Source: Octopus sinensis
Lineage: Eukaryota
Length of the DNA stretch: 64,000 nt
Assembly (NCBI RefSeq): GCF_006345805.1
Contig: NC_042998.1
Coordinates: 99,448,001 to 99,512,000, forward strand
Reading direction: 5' to 3'
Part shown: positions 14,808-64,000 of the stretch, one piece after another
How the letters are laid out: every line of letters begins with the position of its first letter
Position numbering within the stretch: the stretch's first letter is position 1
Position numbers and translations under genes: made by a program
Notes under the pieces: generated by a model
Seen by the model: the letters and a program-made list of their open reading frames with translations, nothing else
Told to the model about the DNA's origin: nothing
Databases searched by the model: none

Positions 14808-14825
14808 GAAGTAGCAATAAATCAA
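12771..14825 (-). CDS. RTE reverse transcriptase ORF (truncated; annotated start lies in flank) with inserted PHD finger
   Basis: YADD at 13716-13727; C-x2-C...C-x2-C-x4-H-x2-C...C-x2-C at about 13424-13563. Confidence 0.9.
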   Translation of the reverse strand: MIYCYFRAIRQKKQAWKAWKNGGSREGYQTARREARRQVYLARGEADKRKFANVLRREDERLEVFRVARQCVRENRDVVGEKCVRMEDGSLALNEDAKREAWRRHYERLLNEENEWDKESLPNVDPTEGPAIRVDSSVVAKAIRSMKTGKAPGPSGITAEMLKISGSVGYNLVTRIVNQVIHEGVIPNDWCSSILVNCYKGKGDALDTNNYRGIKLLDQVMKVTERVIAQLIRERVSLDEMQFGFVPGKSTTDAIFLVRQLQEKYLAKDKPLYLAFVDMEKAFDRVPRSLIWWSMRKLGIDEWLVRTVQAMYRDAVSKVRVGNMYTEEFKVEVGVHQGSVLSPLLFIIVLQAITEEFKTGCPWELLYADDLALIAESLSELEEKFQVWKEGLESRGLRVNLAKTKVLISRKVDNPQISSGRWPCSICRKGVGRNSIRCTQCKLWTHKRCSNVKGRLTGKIVFVCGRCSGALTSENLQKTTSVTFQGEKLEVVDSFRYLGDQVSSGGGCAESVTARIRIAWAKFRELLPLLVTKGLSLRVKGRLYDACVRTAMLHGSETWAVTAEDMRKLVRNEASMLRWMCNVSVHTRQSVSTLREMLYLRSISCGVQERRLRWYGHVARMDEDRCVRKCQSLAVEGTRGRGRPRKTWDEVVKHDLRTLGLTEEMTRDRDLWKYSVREKTRQDK

Positions 14826-18977: not shown

Positions 18978-21280
18978 TTCTTATGCTCGTTATTTAATCC
19001 TATTGCAAAATATTTTGCCTTCAAAGATAGGTGAAGATCATGGAGAATGGATGAGTGTAAATGAAGATGCAACAACCGTTCATTAGTGCACTGACCCAGA
19101 AATTGTAGATTTGTTATAAGCCCACAGCAACAAGCCAGTGGAAAAGACAGCAACGAAACAAATATAGCAAAAGAGCCTCTATTGATAAATTCAGTTGACA
19201 GGATAAGTTCTAGCAGGTCTAGAACAACGAAGTTTTACAAGTGAACAAGAAATAACTAACATTTACATTCTGAGACAAACTCAAAGAAAGGCCAAAGCAT
19301 ATGAAATGGCTCAACTTGCAAGTTATGTTTTAAAAAAAAAATAGCTGAAAAGTCTGGAGCAGAGTAGTAATCATTTGACAATATAACGGTCTCAATCAAT
19401 ATCTGCTAACCAGATGTGCTGTCACCTTCATTAATATCTTAGTCACGTTTCAAAGAAAGAACCTCGATAGCCCTTCATATCAAAAAGATGCTAATCCTGA
19501 CAGCCTTCACTCCGAGACAATAATGCAGATGTGCTTAGTTACTTTTCGCTTCAGAAACGGCAGTGAAGAAAGTGTTTGTTAGTCATTAAAATTTCACTTC
19601 CTTTTCATTTAATGTTTCTTTATTAATCAGTCAGCCGTTGAGTTAATATTTTAAGTGTATTCTAACTACTTTTTAATTCAGTAAAACCACTAATCCAACA
19701 CTCTTCAGGTCCCAATGATGCCGGATTAGCGATGGTCGTTCCGTCTCTCCCTCTCTCTTTTTTCTCTCTATCTATACACACACACAGTTGGCCCGAAGTC
19801 AGCCTTGAACAAGCTATCCTGTCATCAAAAGCATTCAAACCATGACCATATATTTTCTCAAAGATCACCTGAAAGGGTAATCCAGAATTGACTTATGTTC
19901 TTTATCTTCTTGATGCTGTTTGGTTAGCGAAAAATTTGTTTGCCCTTTTTTTCCTCTTTTCATTTTTTTAAAAATCTTGACTCCAGAACCATTAGAACGT
20001 TAGACAAAAATACCTTGCAATATTTGTCCTAGCTCTTTTTATCTTCTGAGTTTACAACTCATCGCCAACTTCGCCTTTCATTGCACCGAAATCGATAAAA
20101 TATTAGTCAAGCATTTGTCAATTTAATCGTCTCCTGTCAAGGCTTTGTGCCTAGAAGGCGACCAGCTAACAGAATCGTTAGAGCGTTGGAATAAATGCCT
20201 TGCAGTATTTGTTGACCCAGTTCTTTACGTTCTGAGTTCAAATCCCGCAGAGCTCAACTCTGCCTTTCATCTCTCGAGGGTCGATAAATAAAGTACCAGT
20301 CAACTAATTTGTTGGCCATGTGCCTAAATTAGAAACTAAGGAAAAGATGTGAGAAGGGTGGAGAAGCTGGAATGAGACCAGAAGACTGGCAAAAATCAGA
20401 GCTGGTTGGAGAGATGGGGTTGCGGCCTTATGTGCCTGAATGCACGAAGAGAACTAGTGGAAAAAGGAAGGCGGCGAGCTGGCAAAATCGTTAGCACGCC
20501 GGGCAAAATGCTTAGCGGCATTTCGTCAGTTTTTACGTTTTGAGTTCAAATTCTGATGAAAAACTTTGCTTTTCATCCTTTGGTGGTAGTGGTAGTTGAT
20601 CGATGAAATAAGTATCAGTTGAACACTGGGTCGATATAATCCACCAGATCCCCTCCTCATAAATTTCAGGCTTTGTGCCTATAGTAGAAATAATTATTAG
20701 CCGCAAAAGACATTCTCCAATAACTGTGTAGTGTGATTAAAATAATTGTTAAACGATAATTGACCCCCAATTCGCAAATCGATTTGTTAAAACATGTCAG
20801 ATTTAGAGGGTGGGAAGAACCTACCTACCCATACACACACTTTCCAAAAAGCATTATGTGAATAAGGTGGATACCGCCAGAAATTGAAATCCGATTGCGG
20901 TCTTGTTTCAGCTGCACTATAATCTAGAGGTTCGACAGATAGAACCAATATTTCTCTCTCTTTATTGGTCTTAACAACGGAGGTGTGTGTGGATTGAGTG
21001 GGGTCATGGTCATGTTCAAAGAAAGCTGTTATAGTAGTCTGGGATAAAAAAGAGCATGAGGTTGGCATGAAAAATGTAGACGTTTGGAAAGTATGCGATT
21101 AGTGTATGCAAAATTTGGAACAAGTATCAAGTTGAACTGGTAATATAAAGCTAAGATTGCCCAAGCAGTAAGCAGTGTAGTAAGCCAGACGGATTGTGAC
21201 TAAAGCCACAGTAGTATTAGTAATAGTAAAAAAAAATTACTACTACAAATCTAAAATAGTAGCTTAAGTAAGTTACTTAC

Positions 21281-21514
21281 CGGATCGACTTTATCCCAGT
21301 TGTTGTACTTGCCAGTAAAATCCAGGGTCATGACATGACCACACACTGATGTAAATTTGAAGTAAGCCGGTTCGCCTTGAAATTTACCTCGATATTCATG
21401 CACTGAACAGGCTCCATTATAACCTTTTCGAGATGTCATGCTGTTGTTGGATAAGATTTTGGCTAACGAAGCAGCCAAAGATGGCTTTTCAGCCACCATA
21501 AATACAGTCTTCAT
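21281..21514 (-). CDS. TOP3B: DNA topoisomerase 3-beta, coding exon 1 (TOPRIM N-terminus)
   Basis: MKTVFMVAEKPSLAASLAKILS...TSVCGHVMTLDFTGKYNNWDKVDP matches the TOP3B N-terminus; ends at CCG|gtaagt; 234 nt, phase 0. Confidence 0.97.
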
Positions 21515-27089: not shown

Positions 27090-30000
27090 CCAGGAAGAAC
27101 ATCAGTATGGAGGAAATCACAAAAAAGTGGTTTGTGCAAGATCTAGGATACAATAAGGATGACAAGAGATGCGACAATGTTGGCATAAGTTGGTCAGTAA
27201 ATATAGGCAAGAGAGGAATTCCACGAGAAGTGGAATATTTTTCCAACTTCAGCTATGAAATTTTTCTGTTATCAAGGAACATTCTGTAGGCTGAGAACAA
27301 CTTTTGCAATGAAGATATGACATTTGGACCACTATCTGATTAGTGACTTCAGGCTTAAGGCCAGAAAGATCCAGAGACACAAGCCAATATGATAAAGAAG
27401 GCTGTGGAAGCTCAAGGATCCTTTAAACAGGCAGAAATTTAGAGATGTCCTTAATGAGGCTTTTGATAAAAAGGAGGGAGAGATAGAGACATATGACAAA
27501 GTGGACAACTGGAAGTTCCTACAGGACAATCTACTAAGGGCAACAGACCAAATTTGTGGTTGGAGCAAAGCCTTCGCTAGACCAAGAGTGATGTAATGGT
27601 GGAACAGTGATGCTGACATGGTCATAAAAAAGAAGAGACAGGTCTGGAAAGAATGGAAAAAAGCAGGTAGCAAAGAATCATAGCAGAAGGCTAAAAGGGA
27701 GGCTAGACATCAGGTTTAGCAAGCTAGGATAGAAGCAGAAAAGAAAGGGTTTGCCAAAGTCTACAGTTTGAAGATCAGAGACTTGAAGTGTTCCAGATTG
27801 CTAGACAACTGGGTGACAGATTGTGCGACTGCCGAGCAGCAATCCGAGACAAGGAGTAAGATGATGCTTGTTGCGGCAGTGATGCAGTGACACCTGGAGT
27901 TGAAGCCATGGTTCTGTCCAGGGCGGGACAGATGGCATTGCTCTGTTTCAGTGACGCCGTGTCGCCTGTGGTGGATTGGGAAGCGACGACTAGCCCATCC
28001 GCCGTGCTGGCAGCGATGCAACATGAAGTCAGTGGCGTAACCTGACTGGGTCCTCGACTGCGAGGAGAAAACGACGATCACCCTCTGTGCATTGGGCTGA
28101 CGGGTGGAAGAAGCGAAGAGCGGGTGGCCATGATGGCGATGGTGGCAGCAGCGAGAGCGCAAGGCACGTGCTGCTTGCAGTAGTGACGTGCCGACATCAT
28201 CCGCAGATGCCTGGTGGAAGCGGCATGCTGGGTGGAAAAGGACGTTGAGTCGGGGCTGGGGGGTGGGGAGCAGTGGTGAGAAAGGCATAAGAAAGAGAAA
28301 AAAAAACCCGTGATCGACCATGGAAAGCACGTGCAATGAGGTTGTCCTGGCTCTGCGAGCAAAAGTGTATGGGCGCACGGCGTGTAGTGGGTGCTTTTAT
28401 GTACCACTGGCACAAGGGCCAATCAGGCAGTACTGGCAATAGCCACACTCAAATGGTGCTTTTTACGTGTCAACTACTGCTAGACAATGTGTCAGTGAGA
28501 ATCAAGATACTGTATGAGAGAAGTGTGCATAGCTGGATAATAGTATGCTTGCAGTAAGTGATGTGGACAAGAGGAGTGGAAAGATAACTGTGAGACTGTT
28601 GAATGTAGAGAATTAATGGGACAAGGAAAGTCTCCCTCATGTGAACCCACCAGAGGGATCAGCTATCCTAGTGGACAGTGGTGTCGTAGATAAGGCTATT
28701 AAAACCTGAAAAAAAACAGGAAAACCCCATGTCCATCCAGAATCAGAGCCAAGATGCTCAAAGTATCAGATAAGGTAGGATACAGGCTAGTCACCTGCAT
28801 AGTAAATCATGTCATTCAGGAAGGTGTAATGCCCAAGGACTGGTGTAGCAGTATTACTGTTGGCTGCTACAAGGATAAGGGTGGTGTTTTTGATAGAAGC
28901 AATTATAGAGGCATCAAATTCCTGGACCAGGTGATGAAAATTACAGAGTTATAGCCCAATTAATTAGGAGCAGAATTAAGCTAGACACAATGCAGTTTGT
29001 CTTCATCAAGGGAAGCGGCACTACCAAAGCTATTTTCATAGTTAGGCAACTGCAAGAGAAGTACTTAGCTAAGAATAAACTATTATACTTGTTCTTGACA
29101 TTTGTTGATCTAGAGAAAGCCTTCAACTGTGTGATATGGTGGACTCTGAGAAGGCTTGGGATAGATGAGTGGCTAGTGAAAGCTGTACAGGCTATGTACA
29201 AAGATGCTGTCAGTAAGGGGAAAGTTAACCTTAAGTACAGCGAAGAATTTAGTATACAAGTAGGGATTTATCAAGGTTCAGTCCTTAGTCCCCTCCTTTT
29301 CATCATTGTCCTCCAGGCCATAAAAACCAATGATGATATTACTATCATTTAAAGTCTGTTGTCCATGCTGGCATAAGTTGGATGGTTGTGCTTTTATATC
29401 AATGAATTACTAAATAACAGACTTTCCAAATGGATTGAGTGAATAATTGATAATGACTTCTTCACTGCATGAATAATGATATTTTCACCTTTCTTTTCCA
29501 TATTTTCCTCTTCATAGTCTTAATAGTATTAACATTTCAGACAAGGCAGCATGCTGGAAGAAATGTTAGCACACCAGGCAAAATGCTTAGCGGTATTTCA
29601 TCTGCTGTTATTCCACTGAGGCCAACTTTGCCTTTAATCCCTTTGGGGTCGATAAATTAAGTACCAGTTATGCACTGGGGTCGATGTAATCGACTTAATC
29701 CCTTTGTCTGTCCACGTTTGTCCCCTCCATGTTTAGCCCCTTGTGGGCAATAAAGAAATAAGAAACATTAGTACGCCTGGTGAAATGCTTAGCATTATTT
29801 TATCTGTCTTGACATTCTGAGTTAAAATTCCATTGAGGTTGACTTTGTCTTTCATCATTTTGGGGTCGATAAATTAAGTACCAGTTATGTACTGGGTCAA
29901 TCTAATTGACTGGTCCCCTCCTCCAAAATTTCAGGTCTTGTGCCTAGAGTAGAAAAGATTAAAATTTCAGACAAGTATATGTATTACGATGTCATACACT

Positions 30001-30655: not shown

Positions 30656-31246
30656 AATTTCTTTATCAGACAAGTATTCGGGATCTAGACTTTATTGTTC
30701 ATAAATAAGAATGAAAAATATAGAAATTTACTGAGAGAATATAGCAACAAGAACAAGATATATTAAAAAAAAAAATATCCATAAAAGTGGCATTAATACA
30801 AACGTCAATGGGTTATCCCTGATTTTTTATAGTATATAAACTCAGTGTCTCTAGGATAGTAACAAGGCAACAGTAAGGTAGTAGACTTGTTTGACTGTCT
30901 CTCCTCTATAAAAAAATTGAACTTGCACCAAAATGAAAGTAACAAATTAAATCACTAGATAAAATTGGAAAAAAATAAAATTTAAGAGGAAATCAGAGGT
31001 ATTGGGTTTTTGTTTTAAAAACAAGCATTTTACAAGGTTGAGTTCTTTTATGCAATTGTTTACATTTGTACTTGTTTATGCTTTTTTTCCATAATTTTAT
31101 CTTTGAATCTTTTCAGCAAGAATTTTAGAATTTTTTTCAATTTGAATCTGTCTTTTTTTTTTGATCTTGACAAAGCAACTTCCTTCTTTTCAGAATTAAT
31201 ATGATATACATCTTCATGAGTTAAAGGTGTAGCAAGATTTATGCTT

Positions 31247-31862
31247 TTATCGTATAGTTGAGTTCTCATTTATCTCAAGAAGCAATAATTTATTCTTTCT
31301 ACACACCTTAGAAACAAATCTGTCAATCTCTCTCTGGATAATTTTATTTGGTTTATTAATAGATATTTTTTGAACTATCATATTATCTCCACTTTCTGAG
31401 TGTTTATTTAGTGTATCCACTGGAGCATTCTGTGTTGCAATTTGAATATATGATGAACTAGGTGATGTATTGTTTAATAGTTGTTGAGCATCTAAACATT
31501 TCTGTGTAACATTATCTTGCAAGTTTAAAATTATTCCTTTTGTTGTACTAACTGGATGAAGTGTCTTTGAATTAGATTCAGAACAATTTTGGTTCAATGG
31601 CTCTATGTCAGACCAAGTAAAAGGAGACTTCATCTCTTTATCTATATTGAATTCTGCATTGCTTTGAAGCTCAAGCATATTCTGGTGGAATAATTTTAAT
31701 AAAGCTAACCGTTTTTTTACATCAAATTTTTGTTCTAAGCGCAGACAAGAATATTGTTCAACTAACTGCTTCAACAGTATTCTGAAATCTTCGTTAGTTT
31801 TTTGGCATAACTGGAAAATATCACCCTTTGAGGGGCTGCTACATATCTCTGAAGAATTGACC
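31247..31862 (-). CDS. Unrecognised gene, terminal exon (possible frameshifted extension to 31060)
   Basis: ttttcttttcatacag|G-VNSSEICSSPSKGDIFQLCQK...EINENSTIR*; phase matches exon 2; total CDS 873 nt = 290 aa + stop; AATAAA on minus strand at 30691-30696. Confidence 0.8.
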
Positions 31863-32769
31863 CTGTATGAAAAGAAAAAAAAAAGAAGTCATTAGTCTGT
31901 AGAAACTTTTGAAAAATACAAGCAAATAATTATTAGAAGAGTGGTTATGAGTAAATTACTTCACATGAAAAAATATTTCTTAAAATATCTGAAACTTGCC
32001 CTTTCAGATGGGTTTCTTTTAGCTTATACATTCTATTCTTGGTGAGGGTACATGGCCTAGTGTTCAGGGTGTTGCACTCATGATTGCAGGATTGTGGTTT
32101 CAATTCCTGGACAAGGTGGTGCATTGTTTTCTTGAACAAAACATTTATCTCACATTGCTCTGTGATCGCTTCAACACCTGATGTGTGGTATACTGTGCAC
32201 CTGTTCAAGCAACATTGGTTTGATGGAGGAAGTGAGCTAACATACAGCTCATACATTTGATCATCATCGTTTAACGTCTGCTTTCCATGCTGGCATGGGT
32301 TGGACGATTTGATTGAGGACTGGCAAACCAGATGGCTGCACCAGGCTCCAGTCTTGATCTGGCAGAGTTTCTACAGCTGGATGCCCTTCCTAACGCCAAC
32401 CACTCCGAGAGTGTAGTGGGTGCTTTTAATGCCACCGGCACGAGGGCCAGTCACGTGGTACTGGCAGCAGCCACGCTCAAATGGTGTTAGTGACTAAGAT
32501 GTATGCTGATGATGGTAGTCTCTTGTACTTCAAAAAAAGACCATTCTGCTGTTTCTTGCTGAACAACCTGCACAAATGATTTGTTTATTGTGATCAAATG
32601 TATGAGCTGTATATTAGCTCACTTCCTCCATAAAACCGATGTTGCCTAAACAGGTGCACAATGTACCACACATCAGGTGTTAAAGTGATCGCAGAGCAAT
32701 GTGAGATGTGTTTTGCTCAAGAACACAATATACCTCTTGGTCTAGGAATTGAAAGCACAAACATTAATC

Positions 32770-33065
32770 AGCATATACTGAGGATGAAGAACTCAGCGCT
32801 GTACAAGAACCTTCCAATAGTTAGCTCGAAAATAACATAGAGGAGACTGAGGTTAGCTGGACATGCTCACCATCATTCAGAGTTGGTACTGCACTCAGTG
32901 CTTCTGTGGGAGCCCCTACATGGACACACTAGAAGAGGAAGCCCGAGGATGACTTACGTAATGCCCTAAGGATAGATACTGGTCTCTGGGAGACACAGGA
33001 CAAGGCAGTGATGATGAGGAACATAGACTGCTGGAGAGAACTTGTTCATGGATCTCGGGAATTTT
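32770..33065 (+). mobile_element. 3' fragment of a non-LTR retrotransposon
   Basis: RRLRLAGHAHHHSELVLHSVLLWEPLHGHTRRGSPRMTY, a LINE C-terminal motif. Confidence 0.7.
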
Positions 33066-34202
33066 ACCTGCACTAGATAGATATTTCTTCTGATTTTAGC
33101 ATAAATTCTCTGATCAAATATTTATGATTAAGATTGACTTCAAATTTAGTTGATATTTTTACTATCCATTATATTACCTTATGTAGGTATGTGTATAGAA
33201 AGTTCAATGGAATGTGAATGCTGCAATTTGTGCATTTATCTAAGCTCCAAATATATGTCTAACTGGGATTAGAATATCTTGTGAGCTGGAGTTGCATTTA
33301 TATATCCCCATTGTTGTAATGTTCACTTTTTCATGTATGCATGGGTCAGACAGAATTTGTCAAACCAGATTTTCTATGATTGGATGCATTTCCTGTTACC
33401 AACCTTCATATGTTTTCAAGCAAGGTTAATATTTCCTCATGGCCAAACGGGTTTCCATGGAAGACTGGAAAACAAACAACACCATTTCGTTGATAATGAT
33501 GCTTGTTTTACAACTATCACATGATGTCAAGACAAGTAGACAGAAACACACACACACATATATGCATACATATACAACAGGCCTCATTTAGTTTCTCTCA
33601 ACCAAATCTACTCACATGACTTTCTTTGGCATTGGAGTATAGCAGAAGACACTTGTTCAAAATGCCATGCAGTGGGACTGAATCCAAAGCTATATGCTTG
33701 GGATATCAAGACTTCCTAACCAGAGTCATATCCGCACCTATGAGTTTGTGTGTGTGTGTGCGCGCGCGTCAGTAGTTCATATATCCAAAAAGGAAGCACA
33801 CTCTAACACATTAGAGCAGTAGTATATTTAGTAGGTTGTTTGTTAAATGCAGTCAGAGAGAGACCATTCGTTTAGCTTAACTGTATAGGTGACTTGTCAG
33901 ACCCAAATGGTTGAAAGTACATCTGATGAGTTGCCTATACAGCTAAGTGCAAAACCAATGGCCATAACAGACAACCTTTAAAATATATATATATACTGTT
34001 TATTTGTTGGTTAACAAGGTTACCAATGATTTCTTGTGAAGAGATCTTCACAGTTGTTCAAGTGTTGGTACTTATTTCCATTTCGGAAATGAGTACCAAC
34101 ATGTTCATGTGCACAATAACACAAAAGAAATTATATTCAAGCCAGCATTGAAAAATGAATGTTAAAAAGTACAAGAAAAGTTTTAAAAAATAGGAAACTT
34201 AC

Positions 34203-34457
34203 TTGGAATATAATTTAATAAACCAATCAAAATCATGTTCTTTAATATTTTCAAAATTTTTACAACTATGAATTGAGTTTATAGCTGAAAATTGTTTGTG
34301 GAAGTCTTGCAGTTTATTTATTTTACAGTGATCACGACAACTTGAATTCAATTGTGGGTATAAATATTTAATGGTATCAATTACAAATAGGCAGTTAACT
34401 GATGATAATTCAAGTAATCTATACATTGACCAATTTGATAAGGTACTTGGTGATGGC
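34203..34457 (-). CDS. Unrecognised gene, exon 2
   Basis: tttttttgcttattttgcag|G-PSPSTLSNWSMYRLLELSSVNCLF...HDFDWFIKLYS-AA|gtaagt; 255 nt, open in only one frame; phase 2 at both ends. Confidence 0.8.
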
Positions 34458-35332
34458 CTGCAAAATAAGCAAAAAAAATAAGAGTAGTAAAGAATAATTA
34501 CTTACAAAAAACATAATGAAAGTTCTGGTGGCGAATGTCATTTGAACACATTCTCATGCAAATGATTAACACATCAATTTGTAAATAAAAACAGTTAACA
34601 GAGAGTTGTTGCTGTTATCATCATTTTAATGTCTGCTTTCCCATGATTGCATGGGCCACATGAAATTAGTTGAGACAGATTTTCAACAACTGGATGTGTT
34701 TCCTATCACCAACCCTCATCTATTTCCAAGTAAGGTAATTTTTCCCCTTGACTAGACATGTCTCCAAAATGAAGGACACTGCTTGCAACTATCACATGAT
34801 GAAAGGCAAGGAGGCAGTAATACAAACATATATACATAGTCAGTGTATTATACAAACAATTTGGACTGGTATATTTTAATTTTATCACCCTTGAAAGAAT
34901 TATTAAATGCAAAAAGAGTGTAGAGAGCTGGAACAAATATTGCAACACAGTTTGACTTGTGCTCTGAACACTGAACTAATTCATCATTTGAGGAAAACAA
35001 AAATGTGATTGTCATGGCTGGAATGCCTGTTCATTATAGGTCTGCTTGACTAGAATTGACCTGGGGTCAAACAGCAGCTGCTACTACTGCTACTGCTCAT
35101 AGAATCTGCCAATACAATGCATTTACTCTTCATATTCACAAGTGAAAAATTAGAGATCAGAAAGCAAAACTCCCCTAGAGTTATGGTGAAGCCTTTATTG
35201 ATAAGAAGATGCATAATATGGAGTAGATTGGGTAGTGGGGGTCTTCTGTGTTGTAAAGGCATAAGTTTTGTAAGGGTATCTTATATGTGCTGAAACTCAA
35301 ACAACAGTTTGAGGGGTGGTATCTGCATTAGG

Positions 35333-35560
35333 AAGGCGGCGAGCTGGCAGAAACGTTAGCATGCCGAGCGAAATGCTTAGCAGTATTTCGTCTGCTGCTA
35401 CGTTCTGAGTTCAAATTCCGGTTGACTTTGCCTTTCATCCTTTCAGGGTTAATAAATTAAGTACCAGTTACACACTGGGGTCGATGTAATCGACTTAATC
35501 CGTTTGTCTGTCCTTGTTTGTCCCCTCTATGTTTAGCCCCTTGTGGGTAATAAAGAAACA
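35333..35560 (+). mobile_element. tRNA-derived SINE, well-preserved copy
   Basis: aggcggcgagctggcagaaacgttagc...gttcaaattcc...gttgactttgcctttcatcc...taaagaaa. Confidence 0.85.
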
Positions 35561-36945
35561 GGTATCTGCATTAGGTAAAAAGAGGAAACTATTCAACAAC
35601 CAATTTCTTAGGTACCCTACGACCTAAGTACATTTTAGTGCTCATCTGACTTTTTTTTTTACATAATCTTTCTAATAATGGATATATTTTAGTGGAATTT
35701 TTAAATGAATGTTTCCTGAATACATTTTCAAAGGTGTAGATGATGAAAATTTTGATTGATAATTTTTTTATTATTTTTTTTCATATTTTCTTTTACATGG
35801 AAAAGAAGTTTATACTTTTAAAACCATCCTACTACTTGGCTCTTGATCATTGCACAACTTAAAAATTGATATTATTATCCTGATCAATATGAAAGTGAAA
35901 GGCATGCAGTGCATAGCCTTAGTAGGACATAACTATGGTTTAGTGCCCTCCTATCTCTGTTTTTACCATAACTTTATCTTTTTTTTTATTTACTTGTTTC
36001 AGTAATTAGACTGCAGCCATGCTGGGGCTTTGACTTGAGAATTTTTAGTCAAATGAATTGACTCTAGTACTTTTTTTAAAATCCTGGTACTTATACTATT
36101 GATATCATTTGCTGAGCCACGAAGTTACAGGGACACAAACACAAAATCCATTATGGCTAATCTTACTAATCAGTTTCGCATTAGGAGTTCAATGGAGTGT
36201 TAGCTAACAGTCCAATTATGTAATGCAGCACTCTTCTGAGATGGCAGGTATGAAATGAAATATTAAATGCCAACTCTGAAAAGCACAGGATTACATAATC
36301 AAACTGTTACCTGACACTGTTGAACACCTGGTGTAAAACTGATTGGTAAGATCAAGCGCAATACATAATTACATAATACTGTACACTTCGATAAATATAC
36401 CCACTCTACTAACAGATATAGGAGAGCATTTTTTCCCGACTTATGGATTCTTAGAGGGCTTACACACACTCACATACATACATACATTATACATATATAT
36501 ATATATATAAAGGGCGACATGTAATATCTTAATGTATAACTTTCTTTGATGAAATTATGCTCATAACATATAAATGCAAATTTGAAGCATAAATTTGTAA
36601 TTTACCTATTGAGTACTAATAGAAATGGCTACAAGTAAAGATTACCAATTTTTTAATAATAGATAATTATTATTAACTCTTCATTTTCTTGCTTTCAGTT
36701 AACTGAATGTGAATATAAATATATACATATCATCAGCGTTGGGCCACATGGAGGCAAAGTGGCTTGCATTCCTCACACAAATGGCACCCGTGCCAGTGGC
36801 ACGTAAAAGCACCCATTACACTCTTGGAGTGCTTGATGTCAAGAAGAGCATCCAGCCGTAGAAAGCCATGCCAAATCAGACTGGAGCCTGTTGCAGCCTT
36901 CCAGCATGCTAGCCCAATCAAACCGTCCAACCCATATATATATAT

Positions 36946-36992
<47 letters not shown>

Positions 36993-38144
36993 TCTTTTAC
37001 TTGTTTTTACTTCATTTAGTCGAGCAAATCGACCCCAGGACTTATTCTTAGTAAGCTTAGTACTTATTCTATCGGTCTGTTTTGCCAAATCGCTAAGTTA
37101 TGGGGACATAAACATACCAGCATCGGTTGTCAAGTGATGTGGGGGGGGGGGAAACACACACACACACTTATATATATATATACATACAACCGACGATCTT
37201 TTTTCAGTTTCCGTCTACCAAATCCACTCACAAGGCTTTGGTAGGCCTGAGGCTATAGTAGAAGACAATTGCCCAAGGTGCCACGTAGTGGGACTGAACC
37301 CGGTACCATGTGCTTCGTAAGCAAGCTGGTACTTCCGGGACCTATATCGAAGTTACGCCTAATTATCAATGCTTTTATGTATATGTGTATTCATATACAT
37401 ACAAACAGGAGACATCGTCGTATAGCTAGCTGGTGACGATGTCACCTGGGGCTGAACAACAGTAGCATTCGTTCCAACCGGGACTGTCACATTAGGGTGG
37501 CAAATAATCTTTACTTTATATCATTTATTATCAACGTGAAAGTCAAAGGCACGATAAAGCGAAGTACAATACAAATCAAATGTATGGGTACACAATGCAA
37601 AACAAAAGCATTCAGTAATGATACTGAATTGTTGCAACCAAACGAAGATAGGAATTTTTTTATTGAGCCTTCTAATTTATATTGATAATATATGATATTA
37701 ATTAAGATAAGATCCTCGATTTATTTTTCAGTTGTATAATAATCACGAACAAGTTAGTAAAAAGAAATCGACAAGTTTTTGTTTTTATTTCATTAACATA
37801 ATCGTCATATCGGCGATCCTTCGGTTTAGGTATCTATTGCCTTTAATAACGTATGTCTGCAAAATTTCAGTTAAAAACGTGCACTAAGAAAAAATAATAA
37901 AGCCGGTAGTGGGAGCACTAAACTGAAGATATGTCGCCTTTATGAAATGTTGCTCCACTCGGTCGTAACATTTTACTTCCGAGCATGTTCATCAAGCAAC
38001 TGTGAGTTTTTAATTTAGGCATTTATCTAACACGCATAATGCTTCTTAACATCACTGTAAAATCATAACAATCAAACATGTAAACATTTGTTAAAAACAG
38101 TCAAGGTTTAGAAATACCATAGAGAAACGAAAAGTTACACTTAC

Positions 38145-38146
38145 AT
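38145..38146 (-). CDS. Unrecognised gene, putative exon 1 coding part: first two bases (AT) of a split start codon
   Basis: Minus strand reads ttccacgAT|gtaagt (consensus donor at 38144-38139). AT plus the first G of exon 34457 gives an in-frame ATG with A at -3. Confidence 0.55.
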
Positions 38147-38202
38147 CGTGGAAGTTGATAGTAACTAGGTAAGTTTTCTCCCCTTCGTTTGATGAGTATT
38201 CG

Positions 38203-38216
38203 CCAGCAGGTGGCGC
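38203..38216 (+). promoter_or_regulatory. CTCF consensus motif in a putative bidirectional promoter
   Basis: CCAGCAGGTGGCGC is an exact match to the CCASYAGRKGGCRS core, in a CpG-retaining region between two divergent genes. Confidence 0.7.
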
Positions 38217-38229
38217 AAAGTGTTACATC

Positions 38230-38301
38230 TAAGCCGCCATCAGTGCGAGGTATTATCGCTTATTCGCATCCTTCTCTCATGTGCAGCATTTGTTTTTCAC
38301 G
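38230..38301 (+). other. MED14: Candidate non-coding first exon of MED14 (start uncertain)
   Basis: Donor cacG|gtacgt at 38302; coding exon 1 has an upstream acceptor at 43035, so a 5'UTR exon is expected. An alternative donor tag|gtaagt lies at 38169. Confidence 0.35.
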
Positions 38302-40410
38302 GTACGTTCTTATTCTTTCATATCTATCTATCTTCGACTTTTCTGGGGTTTCAGCTTGTTGTAAATACTTTATTTATCTATTGAGGGTGTTTAATTTTGG
38401 GGTAAATCGTCAACTATCAGTGAAAGAATTTCATTTCAATATGTTGTTATTGTTAGGCATTATTACATGAGTTTGAACTAATGTAATAATAAATGGTATG
38501 TTGAGGTCCCACAAATTTCTAAAAAATATTGGTGAGGAGAAATGAAATTCTCAAGAGTTATATGACATACATGTGAAATAATTAAGAATAGAAACTGGTT
38601 CATAAGTTTAACTCCTCGTTCGTTGTTTACTCCAGCGGCCGGCTCTTATTTATTATTTTTCATATAAAGTGTTGGATTATTACGGTTGTTTTATTTTCGT
38701 AATGTAGTTTCGCTGGATAATATTTTTACCGTTTCCCATTGAAAATCTATGTCTATGAACAACACAACAATGCTTTCAAAACTTCGCAACTTCTGATATG
38801 AAGATGACAATCTCAAAACAAGCAAACTGTCCAGATTGACGAGCTTCGTGGAGGATTCTTACGTGGTTGCTCGAATTGCTAGAAATTGCAACCTAATTCC
38901 CTTCGAATCATATATCATCTTTAAATAAAATAAAATGACAGTTTAGATAATGTTGTTCTCTACATGAAAAGTTCGAGAGGATAAAACGCGATGGTTGGGA
39001 TCGGAATGACTTTAATTGTAGGTCAACTCAATCAGATATCTATATGGGTGTGGATGGGGGCTAAAATAACCTGTCCGTATTAAAAGGAAAAAAAAATTAC
39101 CATTCTTTAATAGTGCTCTATATAAAGTTAGCTGTGACGTGAAACATTCCGTTACTAGAAATAAGTTTTGTGTTAAATTTTAATTATTAAATCTAACATT
39201 TTATTTTATTACTATTTAAAAAAAAATTAATGAAATCATGTTTACAGCTATTTAGGATTTGTTTATTAGAATTGAAGCCAAGATTTAGTTTATTACATGG
39301 CATCTCAAACCAATTACAGATTGTATTGTGCTTGACTTCTCCGACAGATAAATTCTACTCTAGATGAAAGACTGTATGACAGTTTAGCATGAGAATGAAA
39401 TCGGTTTGTAAAGAATCTAGAAATTGGGTTCAAACCGTTCCGTCAGTGATTAGTGCTAAGTGGAATCCAAAGACGATTAGCTTTGCTAGAATATTCTCAA
39501 AGGTTGAATCCTTTGCCGATATCAAGAAGAATAAATAACTTTACTTTGTTTTTAGCAATAAAAAATACTTTATTTAGTCATTCAGGGATAATAATTGTAG
39601 GTAATTCGTTAACTATGAGTAAAAGGATTTGATTTCAATATATTGAAGGACAAGAAATTTCTAGTGTGTTTTGGAAGCGGGTATGTGCTTAGTTACTTTG
39701 ATGTATACTTGTAAAGGAAGAGAGAGATTTACGGTTGATTTCGGAGGTTGTCTTTTATGATTAGTTCCTTCCCTCTTGAAATGTTGGATGTGAGAGCAAA
39801 ATAGTAATTGAGGATACAATGATGTATTCTATATCTTGTGGAGACAAGGCCGACAAAGAAGCTTCTTTATATTTGCTAAACTTGATCCTCAGTTAAACCG
39901 TCCAACCCATGCCAGCATGGAAAGCGGACGTTAAACGATGATGGTGATGATGATAGAAACAACCAGCAAGTCAAAACCTTCATACTTAACAAAAAAAAAG
40001 GGGGGATACTACACGTTTGATAATGTAGTCCTAGATACACTGTGCTTGAACTGCCCCCTCCCCAAACAGAGTAGTCACTATCAGAATGTCTTTGATCAAG
40101 TTTGGCAAAGGACTAAGCAACAGCATTAAGAGGTTGGACAGTTTGGCAATAGAGACAAACTGAAATTTAGATTAAAATAAACTTAATGTAATTTTTTAAA
40201 TTTCATTTTTAGTAAATATTTATTTATTGAAATTATTGAATTTTGTTGATTGCCAGAAATGGTATATTGGTATACAATATTTAATTTATCTCTTGAATTC
40301 AAACATTTCTAGTCTTCATAAAACATACACTAATGATGCAGTTGATTCCACTTATCATTCACTATATATGTGTGATGGTTTTTGTGTCAATTTTTAAAAT
40401 TCTGTAAATA

Positions 40411-40663
40411 ATAATAATAACAGTGTTTTATAAGCTTAAAGCATATAAGCGATCACCATGCAATGACTAAAGAAAATAGTCTAATAATGGGGCATATAAG
40501 CCCTCGACAGAAAAAAGTAGGTTTTCCTATACACATGGGATTCAAACCCCACATCTACTTTTTTTCATTGAGGGCTTATATGCCTCATTATTAGACTATT
40601 TTCTTTAGTTATTGTGTGGTGATAGCTTATAAGCTTCATGCTTTTAAAATACTATTATTATTA
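40411..40663. repeat. Palindromic fold-back element (about 100-bp arms)
   Basis: actaaagaaaatagtctaataatggggcatataagccctc versus gagggcttatatgcctcattattagactattttctttagt. Confidence 0.9.
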
Positions 40664-42133
40664 TATATACAGATATATGTATATATATATAAGGTATTTA
40701 GAAGAGGAGCTGTGTCCATAACCTTTGTAGGTCTTCTCAGACAGGTTAGATCAATATGGATGGTGTTCAGCTTCAACAAATGCAAGATAAAAATAAGGTG
40801 GTAATGGGTTTGGGCAGATTGCTTGCAACAGAATGAACTTGTTAAAGTCACCCCTAGTTAAGATGGTGGTATTGACCCTTTTGTATGCTACCATCTTCCT
40901 TTGAAATGATCTTAAAACCTTCCAACAATTGACAAAATTATTTTACTGAATTATATGTTATTTTCAAAATTAATTGAAATAAATGCAGTGTATTTCAACA
41001 GAAAAATGGTAGCAAGAGTTAAACAATATATAGGATTGTGTATTAGGCCCACCAAAATTTTATTACACTACAAACTAGCATTTTATAGACACTGTTAAAT
41101 AAAACCAAGAGACATTATATCACCTTCTAAGTGATACTGAGTTAATATAAGCTCATTACTGTGCATGATTATAGATACTCTAGTCAAAAGTAGTTAATTT
41201 TTAGTTGCATTTCATAAACACCAAATGTGCTTGTCTATGTGATTATGACATGGGTAGTTTATTGGCTGTGGTTGTATTTTAGTTTCTGTTTAAGAACTTA
41301 AATTTTGGCATTTATGTCTTTTACTTGTTTCATTCATTAGATTGTGGCCATGCTGGAGCACTGGCATGAAGAATTTTAGTCTGATGAATTGATTCTAGTA
41401 CTTAATTTTTGTTTAAGCATGGTATTTTTTCTACGGTCACTTTTGCCAAACTGTTATGTTATGAAGATGTAAACAAACCAACATTGGTTGTCAAGTGATG
41501 GTGGAGGACAAACACAGAAAGAAGACACATATATACATGATGAGCTACTTTCAATTTTCCATCTACCAAGTCCACTCACAAGGTTTTGATTGGCCTAATG
41601 CTATAGAAGACATTTGTCCAAGGCGCCATGCAATGAGACTGAATCCAGCACAATGTGTTTGGGATGCCTGTGCCTTGTTCTAAAAAGGATTGGCACATTA
41701 ACTGGGAGAAGAAAGACAAATTGTATCAGATGACAGAACCATTACTGCTCTGGACAGAATGCTTAATGTCATTTCTGGCTTTACATTTTGAGTTCAAATG
41801 TTGCCCAGGTCTACTTTGCCTTTTATCCTTTTTGGGGTTGATGGAGTAAGAATCAGTCAAGCACTGAGGTTGATCTAATCATCTAGCCACATTCCCCAAG
41901 ATTTCAGGACTTGTGCCTATAGTAGAAAGAATTATGAGTACCAACTGTTTTGGTTAGTGTTTGATTTCCATCAGCCTGATGCTTTAAATCTATTTATGGA
42001 TGACAGAGATGTTGGGAAAATGGTCAGTTGAGCAGATATTTAAACATCTAAAAATGCTTTGTGTCTGTCTTATGTAGATGATTATAATTCCTTTTGTCTT
42101 TCATATTTTCTCATATTTACAGTAGCATTGTGA

Positions 42134-42440
42134 AGGTGTATGGCTCAGTGGTTAGAGCATAGGGGTTCACAATCATGCGTTAGTAAGTTTGATACCTGGA
42201 CTGGGCTGTGTTGTGTTCTTGAACAAGACAGTTTGTTTCACATTGCTCCAGTTCACTCAGCTGTAGAAATGAGTTGTGATATCACTGGTGCCAAGCTGTA
42301 TCAGCTTTTGCCTTTCCCTTGGATACATCAATGTCATGGAGAGGGGAGGTTGGTATGCATGAGTGACTCTGTTCTTCCATAAACAAGCTTGCCCGGACTT
42401 GTACTTTGGAGGGGAACTTTCTAGGTGCAATTGTATGACC
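42134..42440 (+). mobile_element. tRNA-derived SINE, second family
   Basis: A box tggctcagtgg, degenerate B box, tgtgttgtgttcttgaacaagaca core. Confidence 0.85.
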
Positions 42441-43063: not shown

Positions 43064-43206
43064 ATGTCCCCCATTGACAGTCAGCTTCCTATGCCGACTG
43101 GTCCGTCACAAGGGGGAGGTACTGGAGGTGGAAGTATTGCACTTAACACTCTTATTGACTATATTATTCAAAGAACTTATGCAGAAATGTCTGTACTGTC
43201 AGAATT
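43064..43206 (+). CDS. MED14: Mediator subunit 14, coding exon 1
   Basis: Acceptor ttttttcag at 43035; MSPIDSQLPMPTGPSQGGGTGGGSIALNTLIDYIIQRTYAEMSVLSE-TT|gtaagt; MED14 N-terminus. Confidence 0.93.
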
Positions 43207-44096
43207 GTAAGTGTATATTTTGTTATTCATAAGTTATTCATGTTATCATCATCATTTAATGTCCATTGTCCATGTTGGCCTGGGTTGGCTCGCTGGAAGG
43301 CTGCACCAAGATCCAGTCTGATTTGGCATGGTTTTCTATGGCTGGATGCCTTTCCAACCACTCCAAGAGTGTAATGGGTGCTTTTATATGTCACCGGTAT
43401 GGATGCCATATGCGTGACACTGGTATCTGCCATGGCCACGATTTTGCTTGGCTTGACAGGTCTTCTTCTCAAACATAACATAATGCCAAAGGTCTTGGTC
43501 ATTGCTTCTGTGAGGCTTAACACTCGTAGGGAGCTCGGCCATTTTGCTTCCATGAGGCCCAATGTATAATCATCACTCTTAAGAGTTTATAAGTATTTAT
43601 ATGTATTTTATGGATTTTGTAAGCTCAAATAAAATTTATTGACTTTCACATTTATCCAAATGTTACAATTTTAAATGTTGAAGAAGAACCCTATCTGAAC
43701 ATAGTACTTTATCTGAAAATAAATAAGGATAGGCATCAGGAAGAGTATTTGGCTGGAGAAGAGTGATTCAAAGATTCTCATCCAATCAGTAATGTGATTG
43801 CTGTGGATATGGTAAATGTGTAGTACTTATATGGATTATGAGATTGTCTCGCTTGCTGATATTTCATTAGCAGTAGATTACTCATTTTGAGGTCTCAGTT
43901 CTTCTATCAGCTGGGATAACTGTTGTTGATAGACTGTTATTTTGTTCAAAGAGCCACACTTCTTGCTCCCCAACTTTCTTGTCTCAAGGAAACACTTGTG
44001 TTGCTATTATTTTATGTTAGGCTCAAATATAATTTGCATAACGAAAATATCTTAATTGTTCAAATATCTTCATTTTCTAAAAATTTTATTTTACAG

Positions 44097-46631: not shown

Positions 46632-47424
46632 TCATCATCATCATCATCGTCGTTTAACGTCCGTTCTCCATGCTAGCATGGGTTGGACGGTTCGACCGGG
46701 GTTCTGGGAAGCCAGAAGGCTGCACCAGGCTCCAGTCTAATTTGGCAATGTTTCTACAGCTGGATGCCCTTCCTAACGCCAACCACTCCGTGAGTGTAGT
46801 GGGTGCTTTTTACGTGCCACCTGCACAGGTGCCAGGCGGGGCTGGCAACGGCCACGGTCAATTGGTGTATTTATGTGCCACCGGCACGGAAGCCAGTCGA
46901 GGCGGTGCTGGCATCGGCCACGAGTCGGATAGTGCTTTTTACGTACCACCAGACCAGGGATCCTGGCTGGTTCAATTCGATTTCGATTTCGCTTGCCCCA
47001 ACATGTCTTCACAAGCAAAGGGGGTTGGCAAGGGTGCCTGTCGTACGGTCGCATTGGAGTATTTTACGTGCCACGGCCACGAGTCGGATAGTGCTTTTTA
47101 CGTACCACCAGACCAGGGATCCTGCTGGTTCAATTCGATTTCGTTTCGCTTGCCCCAACATGTCTTCACAAGCAAAGGGGGTTGGCATGGGTGCCTGTCG
47201 TACGGTCGCATTGGAGTATTTTACGTGCCACGGCCCCGAGTCGGATAGTGCTTTTTAGTACTACACCAGGCCAGGGATCCTGGCTGGTTCAATTCGGTTT
47301 CGATTTCGATTTCGATTTCGCTTGCCCCAACATGTCTTCGCATCATGGGGGTTGGGATGGGTGTCTGTCATCGGATGAGTTCTATATCGACTTCGCTTGC
47401 CTCAACCGGTCTTTGTGTCCAAGG
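46632..47424 (-). mobile_element. Short young RTE copy (3'UTR only) in a MED14 intron
   Basis: Near-identical to 11949-12735 including the 159-bp repeats; differences are mainly small indels. Confidence 0.92.
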
Positions 47425-62833: not shown

Positions 62834-63760
62834 GTAAGTAATCCTTCCATTTTTGTTTCCAAATTATGGTTTTGTAAAATATACTTTGCTTTCCAATTTT
62901 TTTTAATAAATTATATTTTTGTCTAGAATTCTAGCTTATAAAATCTCTTTCCATTGTCTGCTTCAGCTAACATGTCTGTGGCTAGGAAGTTTACTTTGTG
63001 ACCAAGTGTTTTTGGGATTCTTGTATGGCACCATGTGCAAGTGTTTTCTACTAAAGCCTCAAGAATTAACTTAACACTTGGTTTAACACCATTATATGGC
63101 CTTGGGGTGCTTTAACTGTAGCCCTCTCTGTTGCAAGCATTTGGAACAGATCTTTTTGAAAATAACTTCCTCCTTTCCTTCCACAAATCTCAGTAGCTCT
63201 GAAAAAGGTTATTGTCATTGCCCTTCTCTTCACAGATTCATAATACATGCATGCAGGCACATTTATGTAACAAAGATGTCAATTTCAGTTACATAGCCCT
63301 AATACTGTTTTATATGTTTTGGAAATTTCTGAACATCTATATAATGCAAGTGTTTATTTAACATTTTAGTATTTAAACTGGCCATATCCAGCCAAAATAG
63401 TCAACCTGCTTTATATTTAAATTGGCCATATCTGGCCCCTTACACTCATCATACAATGTCATTCTAAAAATAATCTATTACATTATTGAAATCTCTAAGC
63501 TAGTAGATAATTTACAAGTAATTCAAAACAATGTGAATAAAAAAGCATTACATTAGACGAAGTAATCTGAATACTAAATGGTTAAATAAATTGAAATATT
63601 AATGATAAAATATTGTATGAAAACTATAAAATTGTCAGTAAAAGTTTTTTAGGAAGCCTAGAAGTGATAGTAATCATGATTTCTGACCTGATTGTGCTTT
63701 ATGACATGCATTTGAAAATAATAGTATTTAAAGCATTTATTTATTATTGCTCATTTTTAG

Positions 63761-63886
63761 GTGAAATCAAAGACGTTCCAGCTGTTCTCCATGTACCAGT
63801 CTTAAATCCATTCACTTCTGCTGAAGTTTTGCGTGTTGCTATTGATATTCAGCGAGGAACGTTCTTAACATCTGTACCTTGCTCAA
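63761..63886 (+). CDS. MED14: MED14 exon 17 (gene continues beyond the right edge)
   Basis: ttttag|GT-EIKDVPAVLHVPVLNPFTSAEVLRVAIDIQRGTFLTSVPCS-A|gtaaga. Confidence 0.92.
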
Positions 63887-64000
63887 GTAAGACCTTACAT
63901 CATTGTTAACCATTATTGAAAATATTCATGTTGAAACTTCTGGGTTCTTAATTTAGATCCCTTTTGTGTTTCATTCTTTTGGGGTTGATAAATTCTCATA

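What the first reader, a model, noticed from the sequence alone, without database searches (positions are those of the whole stretch)
31060..38146. Unannotated-looking 290-aa gene with an intron-split start codon (AT|G), head-to-head with MED14; possible CXorf38/DUF4559-like HEPN relative
Seen: exons 34457-34203 and 31862-31247 have strong acceptors and donors and join in phase. Exon 2 begins with a lone G; 3.7 kb upstream, ttccacgAT|gtaagt supplies exactly the two bases that make an in-frame ATG with A at -3 (MPSPSTLSNWSM...). An ORF finder sees only fragments of this gene. Inference: the segment AINSIHSCKNF...IKLYSKVNSSEI...DIFQ resembles my unverified recollection of vertebrate CXorf38 (LLSLINSCDHF...IKCRNEIMHSSEM...DFQ). 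As I recall, CXorf38 is a DUF4559 HEPN-like protein whose gene lies next to MED14 on human chrX. If both hold, this is an ancient MED14 neighbour in which the HEPN RxxxxH motif is replaced by YSKVN, i.e. a likely pseudo-nuclease. Otherwise it is a lineage-restricted orphan. Met12 (34426) is an alternative start.
Basis: partly seen in the sequence, partly recalled or inferred. Interest (0 to 1): 0.78.

Follow-up and report, generated by a model that had tools for sequence, protein, structure and literature searches.

The report
Octopus orphan gene with spliced start codon
This is a real octopus gene, already in RefSeq as an uncharacterised protein, whose start codon is assembled by splicing. 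The proposed kinship with the vertebrate HEPN protein CXorf38 is no better than chance in every test I could run.

Summary
On the minus strand, AT (38146-38145) | G…(34457-34203) | (31862-31247) joins in frame to a 290-aa protein. That protein is identical to RefSeq XP_029658352.2, "uncharacterized protein LOC115232550 [Octopus sinensis]", so the gene is already annotated. Orthologues exist in O. bimaculoides (88% identity, same AT|gtaagt), an unnamed octopod and Argonauta hians (40%). Nothing outside octopods was found among 1.84 billion representative proteins. dN/dS is 0.4-0.6. MED14 lies head-to-head and TOP3B downstream in all three octopod genomes.

It is a published HEPN family with motif 162-RNEIMH-167, and it sits next to MED14 in lizard and squirrel. 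The homology claim fails every test:
- No Pfam DUF4559 hit at E≤10.
- hhalign P=0.41, scoring below shuffled controls.
- HMM scores equal to shuffles.
- No Rx4-6H or CxxC motif.
- Intron positions are not shared.
- No structural match, though the model is poor.

In vertebrates CXorf38 lies at the 3' end of MED14, whereas here the gene lies at its 5' end. Best reading: a fast-evolving, octopod-restricted helical protein of unknown function. A degenerate CXorf38 orthologue remains possible at about 10%.

The parts
38145..38146 (-). Last two bases (AT) of exon 1, the first two bases of the start codon. The 5' limit of exon 1 is not determined. The donor GTAAGT follows at 38144-38139.
   Evidence: The same AT|gtaagt is the CDS start of the O. 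bimaculoides RefSeq model. An in-frame TAG at 38167-38165 excludes an upstream AUG.
38197..38248 (.). Conserved non-coding block in exon 1 or the promoter. It holds a CTCF-core consensus (38203-38216, +) and GCCGCCATC (38233-38241, +; YY1-core-like).
   Evidence: 81% identical to Argonauta L005:7315-7365, while the surrounding intergenic DNA does not align. Each motif occurs once in 64 kb, against 0.01 and 0.06 expected.
34458..38144 (-). Intron 1 (3,687 nt, phase 2), which splits the start codon.
34203..34457 (-). Exon 2: the G of the ATG plus codons 2-85 and two bases of K86. It encodes most of the conserved N-terminal helical domain (DxxKYLYPQL, CxDxC, HxCKNFEN, FxWFIxLY).
   Evidence: The acceptor and the phase-2 leading G are conserved in O. 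bimaculoides and Argonauta.
31863..34202 (-). Intron 2 (phase 2, inside the K86 codon). It contains an inverted-repeat element, with arms at 32092-32263 and 32591-32760.
   Evidence: Position and phase are the same in Argonauta.
31247..31862 (-). Exon 3 coding part: residues 86-290 plus the TAA stop. It holds invariant NSS (88-90), FTWSDIE (167-173), a poorly conserved S/N/Q/T-rich linker (177-255) and a conserved basic C-terminal helix (256-286).
43064..43210 (+). First coding exon of MED14, the divergent neighbour. Further MED14 exons follow to the end of the window.
21251..21514 (-). First coding exon of TOP3B, the downstream neighbour on the same strand.
   Evidence: The order MED14 / gene / TOP3B is the same in O. 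bimaculoides and Argonauta, with Pfam Toprim and Topoisom_bac on the TOP3B product.

Best explanation
This is LOC115232550 of Octopus sinensis, a genuine three-exon protein-coding gene that is already in RefSeq.

Shown:
- Its first exon contributes only the A and U of the initiator AUG, so the start codon exists only after a 3.7-kb phase-2 intron is removed.
- The product is a 290-aa soluble protein.
- It has a conserved all-alpha N-terminal domain of about 175 residues (52% identity to Argonauta, seven cysteines).
- This is followed by a poorly conserved S/N/Q/T-rich linker and a conserved basic C-terminal helix.
- Relatives are detectable only in octopods.
- It evolves fast under weak purifying selection.
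- It keeps a fixed place between MED14 (divergent) and TOP3B.

Inferred:
- It acts as a non-enzymatic binding or scaffolding protein. The N-terminal helical domain would be the functional module, and the invariant cysteines and histidine (C41, C45, H64, C66) may hold a metal or stabilise the fold.
- It is transcribed from a promoter marked by a conserved CTCF/YY1-like block.
- It is not demonstrably a HEPN or CXorf38 protein and has no HEPN catalytic motif.
For: - Gene model: in-frame join with canonical splice sites. It is 100% identical to XP_029658352.2. The same split start is used in O. bimaculoides.
- Coding status: the ORF is kept in four octopods, down to 40% identity with Argonauta, and all length differences preserve the frame. 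dN/dS is 0.40-0.59 with an excess of synonymous change (P=0.001-0.05).
- Start upstream of Met12: residues 13-28 are conserved in Argonauta, where Met12 is Val.
- Restricted distribution: a HMMER profile search of 1.84 billion representatives found only octopod proteins. Word-indexed searches of 5.8 billion proteins found the same four.
- Architecture: AF2 secondary structure, with pLDDT 63-84 for residues 95-175, and identity by region of 52% / 14% / 35%.
- Not HEPN: plus no Foldseek hit.
- Conserved synteny within octopods.
- Conserved promoter block.
Against: - No transcript data were available here. Use of donor 38144 rests on two RefSeq models, plus my inference that a 2-nt coding exon cannot be predicted without transcript alignments.
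- In Argonauta the homologous exon ends in TT, not AT. The exact split AUG is therefore not conserved beyond Octopus, and initiation may be more flexible than the model implies.
- dN/dS near 0.5 is only weak constraint.
- The functional statement (non-enzymatic binder) is inference from the absence of catalytic motifs, not from any positive match.
- The structure model is poor (mean pLDDT 47), so a HEPN-like fold cannot be excluded.
Confidence: 0.72

Rival explanations
1. It is a degenerate orthologue of CXorf38. In this reading it is a HEPN-derived pseudo-nuclease that has stayed next to MED14 since the bilaterian ancestor. It would have lost the Zn-ribbon insert and the Rx4H catalytic motif (R to L/Y, H to N) and then diverged beyond sequence recognition.
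For: - CXorf38 is adjacent to MED14 in lizard and squirrel, and the octopod gene is adjacent to MED14 in three genomes. A single inversion of MED14 converts one arrangement into the other.
- Size is similar (290 versus about 320 aa), and both have an alpha-helical N-terminal half.
The hhalign alignment also pairs C66/C145 and F69/F148.
- DUF4559 exists in molluscs, in bivalve NLR proteins (PMC8298618).
Against: - Every statistical test is at or below the null: Pfam no hit, hhalign P=0.41 and below shuffled controls, HMM scores equal to shuffles, and the ungapped segment beaten by all shuffles.
- There is no Rx4-6H or CxxC motif in any orthologue.
- The vertebrate phase-0 intron at E157|V158 is not shared with the octopod phase-2 intron about 8 codons further on.
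- The gene lies at the 5' end of MED14 in divergent orientation, not at the 3' end in tandem.
- The adjacency prompted the hypothesis, so it is not independent confirmation.
Confidence: 0.1
2. The transcript is real, but translation does not start at the splice-assembled AUG. It starts at Met12 in Octopus, or the true first exon differs between tissues or species.
For: - In Argonauta the homologous exon 1 ends in TT, giving TT|G, with no in-frame AUG in the 24 open codons upstream. The deposited Argonauta model uses a different mini-exon.
- The Octopus leader contains upstream AUGs, ATGGCGGCTTAG and ATGTAA, if the TSS lies upstream of them.
- Residues 2-11 are less conserved than 13-37.
Against: - The split AUG has A at -3, whereas Met12 has T at -3.
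- It is the first in-frame AUG after an in-frame stop.
- Met12 is Val in Argonauta, so a start upstream of residue 12, supplied by an upstream exon across the same phase-2 junction, is required at least there.
- Both Octopus RefSeq models use the split AUG.
Confidence: 0.15
3. It is not a functional protein-coding gene. In this reading it is a non-coding or decaying transcript from the MED14 divergent promoter, whose ORF is carried along by recent common ancestry.
For: No domain, no homologue outside octopods, dN/dS of only about 0.5, a poor AF2 model, and a large low-complexity linker.
Against: - The ORF is intact in four octopods, including Argonauta at 40% protein identity, where neutral DNA no longer aligns.
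- Conservation is concentrated in defined blocks, with 52% identity in the N-terminal domain against 14% in the linker.
- Synonymous change is in significant excess (P=0.001 for O. bimaculoides versus the third species).
- Intron positions and phases are conserved.
Confidence: 0.03

Closest known systems
CXorf38 / DUF4559 (PF15112), a HEPN family of the Swt1-like group (Anantharaman et al. 2013, PMC3710099)
   Same: It is a neighbour of MED14 (versus 9, 11, 42). Length is similar, with a helical N-terminal half and a less ordered C-terminal half. A few co-linear identical residues occur around INSC.HF...SSE...FQ.
   Different: There is no significant sequence or profile similarity. The Rx4-6H motif and the CxxC Zn ribbon are absent. 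Intron positions differ. The gene lies at the opposite end of MED14 in the opposite relative orientation. CXorf38 is well conserved (55-60% identity between mammals and axolotl or reptiles), whereas this gene is 40% identical within Octopoda.
Taxonomically restricted ('orphan') genes of cephalopods
   Same: Homologues are detectable only within one order. There is no Pfam domain, sequence evolution is fast, constraint is weak, and a low-complexity segment is present.
   Different: The gene is held in a fixed position between two ancient housekeeping genes across the Octopus-Argonauta split. It has a well-conserved cysteine-rich helical domain, so it is not a very young de novo ORF.
Eukaryotic genes with an intron inside the start codon
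   Same: Exon 1 ends in AT and exon 2 begins with G, so the AUG is created by splicing. From my own knowledge, this is a known but uncommon gene structure.
   Different: Nothing mechanistically unusual was found. The exact split is not kept in Argonauta, where the homologous exon ends in TT.

Membership tests
CXorf38 / DUF4559 (PF15112) | Match to the Pfam DUF4559 profile | tested here: not met
   hmmscan of the O. sinensis, O. bimaculoides and Argonauta proteins at E<=10 gave no DUF4559 hit. All 120 listed CXorf38 proteins carry PF15112.
CXorf38 / DUF4559 (PF15112) | Profile-profile or profile-sequence similarity to bona fide CXorf38 proteins above chance | tested here: not met
   hhalign probability 0.14%, P=0.41. 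The score of 13.4 compares with a shuffled null of 15.3±3.0 and a reversed control of 21.1. The domain-restricted, insert-deleted test gave 13.2 against a null of 13.2±2.5. hmmsearch --max in both directions lay within the shuffle distribution. Caveat: the CXorf38 profile is tetrapod-only (Neff about 2.3).
HEPN superfamily | Rx4-6H motif at the start of the last core helix (human CXorf38 162-RNEIMH-167) | tested here: not met
No R.{4,6}H occurs anywhere in the four octopod sequences.
CXorf38 / DUF4559 (PF15112) | Zn ribbon inserted in the HEPN domain (CX5C...CX2C; PMC3710099) | tested here: not met
   No CxxC occurs in any octopod orthologue, only C41-x3-C45 and H64-x-C66. The squirrel CXorf38 orthologue P0006 has C77-QV-C80, and C60, C66, C77 and C80 are invariant in the tetrapod alignment.
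HEPN superfamily | Four-helix up-and-down HEPN fold | tested here: inconclusive
   AF2 models were poor (pLDDT 33 and 47). Foldseek against the PDB gave no hit below E=6 and no HEPN protein among the hits. The motif region, residues 59-92, has pLDDT below 50.
CXorf38 orthology | Shared intron positions and phases | tested here: not met
Podarcis CXorf38 has phase-0 introns, including one at E157|V158, four residues before R162.
CXorf38 orthology | Conserved microsynteny with MED14 | tested here: inconclusive
   Adjacency holds in both lineages. In vertebrates the order is MED14> CXorf38> in tandem at the MED14 3' end, followed by ATP6AP2 or MPC1L. In octopods it is <MED14 gene> in divergent orientation at the MED14 5' end, followed by TOP3B. 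No intermediate taxa could be examined.
Genes with an intron-split start codon | Exon 1 ends in A or AT, the next exon supplies the rest of the ATG, and there is no upstream in-frame ATG | tested here: met
   AT|GTAAGT...CAG|G with an in-frame TAG 7 codons upstream, in both O. sinensis and O. bimaculoides. It is not met in Argonauta, which has TT|G.

The most novel reading that the evidence does not exclude
The octopod gene is the last recognisable remnant of a bilaterian MED14-CXorf38 gene pair. It would be a HEPN RNase turned pseudo-nuclease that lost its Zn ribbon and catalytic R and H and was flipped to the 5' side of MED14. That would make CXorf38-MED14 one of the few microsyntenies retained in the rearranged octopus genome, and a natural example of HEPN inactivation.
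Probability: 0.1. Interest if true: 0.55.

Novelty: already known. Interest (0 to 1): 0.2.

Why it matters
As it stands, this is an annotated, uncharacterised, lineage-restricted gene with an uncommon but known structural quirk, so it matters little beyond octopus annotation.

Two points have some practical value:
- Any ORF-based or ab initio pipeline will miss or truncate this gene, because two bases of its start codon lie 3.7 kb away.
- A tempting 'motif plus synteny' argument for deep homology with a human immune-associated HEPN protein does not survive simple shuffle controls. That is a useful caution for similar calls elsewhere in the scan.

If the CXorf38 link were ever established structurally, it would date the MED14-CXorf38 pair to the bilaterian ancestor.

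Tried and rejected
1. Pfam scans of the three full-length orthologues at E<=10. The only hit was a chance-level PAH_ZNF598 match (E=0.08) in one of the three.
2. Word-indexed searches of 5.8 billion proteins, with the single sequence and with the 4-sequence profile at E<=10. Only the four octopod proteins were found.
3. A full HMMER profile search of 1.84 billion representatives. It found only O. bimaculoides and Argonauta.
4. A profile search against PDB sequences at E<=10. It gave three chance-level hits, none of them HEPN.
5. AF2 with 3 and then 4 sequences gave pLDDT 33 and 47. Foldseek against the PDB found nothing below E=6.
6. hhalign against an 18-species CXorf38 alignment, run full-length, domain-only and with the Zn-ribbon insert deleted, each with column-shuffle and reversal controls. 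There was no signal.
7. An intron-position test of orthology. The positions are not shared.
8. The supplement of the 2013 HEPN paper, searched for CXorf38 family alignments. The held file has none.
9. A literature search for the two LOC identifiers. No papers were found.
10. Invertebrate CXorf38 or DUF4559 sequences, which would have given a deeper profile and a synteny bridge, could not be fetched.

I considered FTWSDIE (W169-x-x-I172 with flanking S, T, D and E) as a possible LC3-interacting motif. I did not pursue it, because such four-residue cores are common by chance.

Full report
**1. The observation**

Reading the minus strand of the window, I joined AT (38146-38145), 34457-34203 and 31862-31247.
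- The product is 873 nt in frame, coding 290 residues (MPSPSTLSNWSMYRLL...EINENSTIR) and ending in TAA at 31249-31247.
- Both donors are perfect GTAAGT.
- Both acceptors have long pyrimidine tracts followed by CAG|G.
- An in-frame TAG lies seven codons upstream of the AT (38167-38165). The spliced AT|G is therefore the first possible in-frame AUG, and it has A at -3.

**2. The gene is already annotated**

- The 290-aa translation is 100% identical over its full length to XP_029658352.2, "uncharacterized protein LOC115232550 [Octopus sinensis]". The window is therefore O. sinensis DNA.
- The O. bimaculoides orthologue is XP_014774145.1 / A0A0L8HAB0 (285 aa, 88% identity). Its annotated CDS begins at the same AT|gtaagt in a sequence context that is otherwise identical.
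- A coding exon of two bases cannot be found ab initio. I infer, but could not verify here, that both RefSeq models rest on transcript alignments.
- "Unannotated-looking" is right only in the sense that an ORF finder sees fragments.

**3. Relatives and selection**

- Two further relatives were found: an exon-3 fragment from an unnamed octopod read set (P0003, SRR11869391, 74-76% identity) and Argonauta hians GAB1598927.1 (299 aa, 40% identity).
- A HMMER profile search that reads all 1.84 billion representative proteins found nothing else at E<=0.001. Two word-indexed searches of 5.8 billion proteins at E<=10 also found nothing else.
- Nei-Gojobori dN/dS is 0.51 over the whole CDS for O. sinensis versus O. 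bimaculoides (dS 0.10). On exon 3 it is 0.40-0.59 across the three species, with a synonymous excess at P=0.001-0.05.
- Octopus-Argonauta identity is 52% in residues 1-176, 14% in the S/N/Q/T-rich linker (177-255) and 35% in the basic C-terminal helix (256-286).
- Invariant blocks include DxxKYLYPQL, CxDxC, HxCKNFEN, FxWFIxLY, NSS and FTWSDIE.
- Intron 2 has the same position and phase in Argonauta.

This is a genuine protein-coding gene under weak constraint that evolves fast.

**4. The start codon across octopods**

- Exon 2 begins with a lone G after a conserved acceptor in all three genomes.
- In Argonauta, Met12 is Val, while residues 13-28 are well conserved. The start there must come from an upstream exon.
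- The Argonauta homologue of exon 1 is recognisable at L005:7315-7408, and its GTAAGT donor is kept. However, the exon ends in TT rather than AT (CGAT to CATT), and the 24 open codons upstream contain no ATG.
- The deposited Argonauta model instead takes ATGCTCAA|gtaaga from a mini-exon at L005:10001-10008. This lies inside an inverted copy of a MED14 exon (79% identical to window 63755-63918).

The phase-2 junction at the very start of the CDS is therefore conserved, but the exact AT|G split is shown only for the genus Octopus.

**5. Surroundings**

- MED14 lies on the + strand from 43064 (Pfam Med14 E=4.5e-20, RM2_Med14 E=4e-11).
- TOP3B starts at 21514 on the minus strand.
- The order <MED14, gene>, TOP3B> is the same in O. 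bimaculoides and Argonauta.
- A 52-nt block at 38197-38248, in exon 1 or the promoter, is 81% identical to Argonauta, while the rest of the intergenic DNA does not align.
- That block carries the window's only full CTCF-core consensus (CCAGCAGGTGGCGC, 38203-38216, expected 0.01) and its only GCCGCCATC (38233-38241, expected 0.06).

**6.

These checked out.
- The 2013 HEPN survey lists CXorf38 as a new HEPN family, "active", with a Zn ribbon inserted (PMC3710099).
- A 2026 preprint gives the human motif as 162-RNEIMH-167, with E39 and D134.
- I recalled the human sequence from memory. It agreed with those three numbered landmarks, and as a query it retrieved 225 proteins. All 120 listed proteins carry PF15112, and most are named CXorf38 homolog.
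- In Podarcis raffonei and Sciurus carolinensis the gene lies immediately downstream of MED14 on the same strand, followed by ATP6AP2 or an MPC gene.

**7. Testing the homology**

- **Pfam.** There is no DUF4559 hit at E<=10 for any of the three orthologues.
- **hhalign.** The octopod alignment (A3) was compared with 18 tetrapod CXorf38 proteins (A4). The result was probability 0.14% and P=0.41.
- **Shuffle controls for hhalign.** Run locally, the real score of 13.4 is below the mean of 300 column-shuffled controls (15.3±3.0; 73% of shuffles reach it). The reversed alignment scores 21.1.
I restricted the comparison to the octopod N-terminal domain and the CXorf38 HEPN domain, and also deleted the Zn-ribbon insert (residues 44-112). 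The scores were 13.2-13.4 against nulls of 13.2-13.9.
- **HMM against sequence.** hmmsearch with filters off, in both directions, lies within the shuffle distribution.
The ungapped match (IHSCKNF...DIFQ against INSCDHF...RDFQ) has 10 identities and a BLOSUM62 score of 13. Every one of 1,000 shuffled octopus sequences finds a 41-mer scoring at least that well somewhere in CXorf38 (null mean 24.2).
- **Motifs.** No octopod sequence has any Rx4-6H or CxxC.
- **Introns.** The vertebrate intron nearest the motif is phase 0 at E157|V158. The octopod intron is phase 2, about 8 codons further on.
- **Structure.** AF2 models were poor (pLDDT 33 and 47). Foldseek against the PDB gave nothing below E=6 and no HEPN protein.

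**8. Weighing the synteny**

Adjacency to MED14 in both lineages is real. However, it is what suggested the hypothesis, so it cannot also confirm it. The two genes lie at opposite ends of MED14 in different relative orientation, although one inversion of MED14 would interconvert the arrangements. The other flank also differs (TOP3B versus ATP6AP2 or MPC). I could not examine intermediate taxa. Bivalves do have DUF4559, fused to NACHT in NLR proteins (PMC8298618), so the family exists in molluscs. I put the degenerate-orthologue reading at about 10%.

**9. Verdict**

This is a correctly read, already annotated gene that is restricted to octopods as far as can be detected. It has a splice-assembled start codon.

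My best mechanistic guess, which is inference only, is a non-enzymatic helical binding protein whose conserved cysteine-rich N-terminal domain is the working part. The CXorf38/HEPN relationship is not supported by any test available here, and it is not strictly excluded, because the profiles are shallow and the structure model is weak.

Interest is low.

Noticed in passing
window 38197-38248 (CTCF core 38203-38216 +; GCCGCCATC 38233-38241 +): A 52-nt non-coding block between the gene and MED14 is 81% identical to Argonauta, while the flanking intergenic DNA does not align. It contains the window's only full CTCF-core consensus (expected 0.01) and its only YY1-core-like GCCGCCATC (expected 0.06). 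Argonauta keeps the CTCF consensus through a C-to-T change at the degenerate Y position. It may be a shared promoter or insulator element of the divergent gene pair.
   Followed up: partly
L005:9877-10040 (+), Argonauta hians: An inverted copy of a MED14 exon (79% identical to window 63755-63918) sits inside intron 1 of the Argonauta orthologue. The deposited Argonauta gene model takes its ATG and donor (ATGCTCAA|gtaaga, L005:10001-10008) from this copy. It could be an exonised duplicate replacing the lost split AUG, or an annotation artefact.
   Followed up: partly
window 39981-42261: About 2.3 kb of DNA between the gene and MED14 is present in O. sinensis but absent from the collinear O. bimaculoides sequence. 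Both flanks map to L001:8128, so this is probably a transposon insertion.
   Followed up: no
window 32092-32263 and 32591-32760 (intron 2): A long inverted repeat: 117-nt arms at 91% complementarity, plus 61-nt outer arms at 79%. The arms flank a 327-nt core that resembles the dispersed repeat seen many times in the window, so it is a foldback or MITE-like element.
   Followed up: no
window 12771-14825 (-); also about 5828-6646 (-) and 28754-29352 (+): An intact 684-aa ORF with reverse-transcriptase-like sequence, resembling a non-LTR retrotransposon, plus degenerate copies. A second dispersed repeat gives near-identical ORFs at 11987-12694 and 46670-47248.
   Followed up: no
window 38233-38222 and 38224-38219 (minus strand): If the TSS lies upstream of the conserved block, the O. 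sinensis leader carries two minimal upstream ORFs, ATGGCGGCTTAG and ATGTAA. The second is absent in O. bimaculoides and Argonauta.
   Followed up: no
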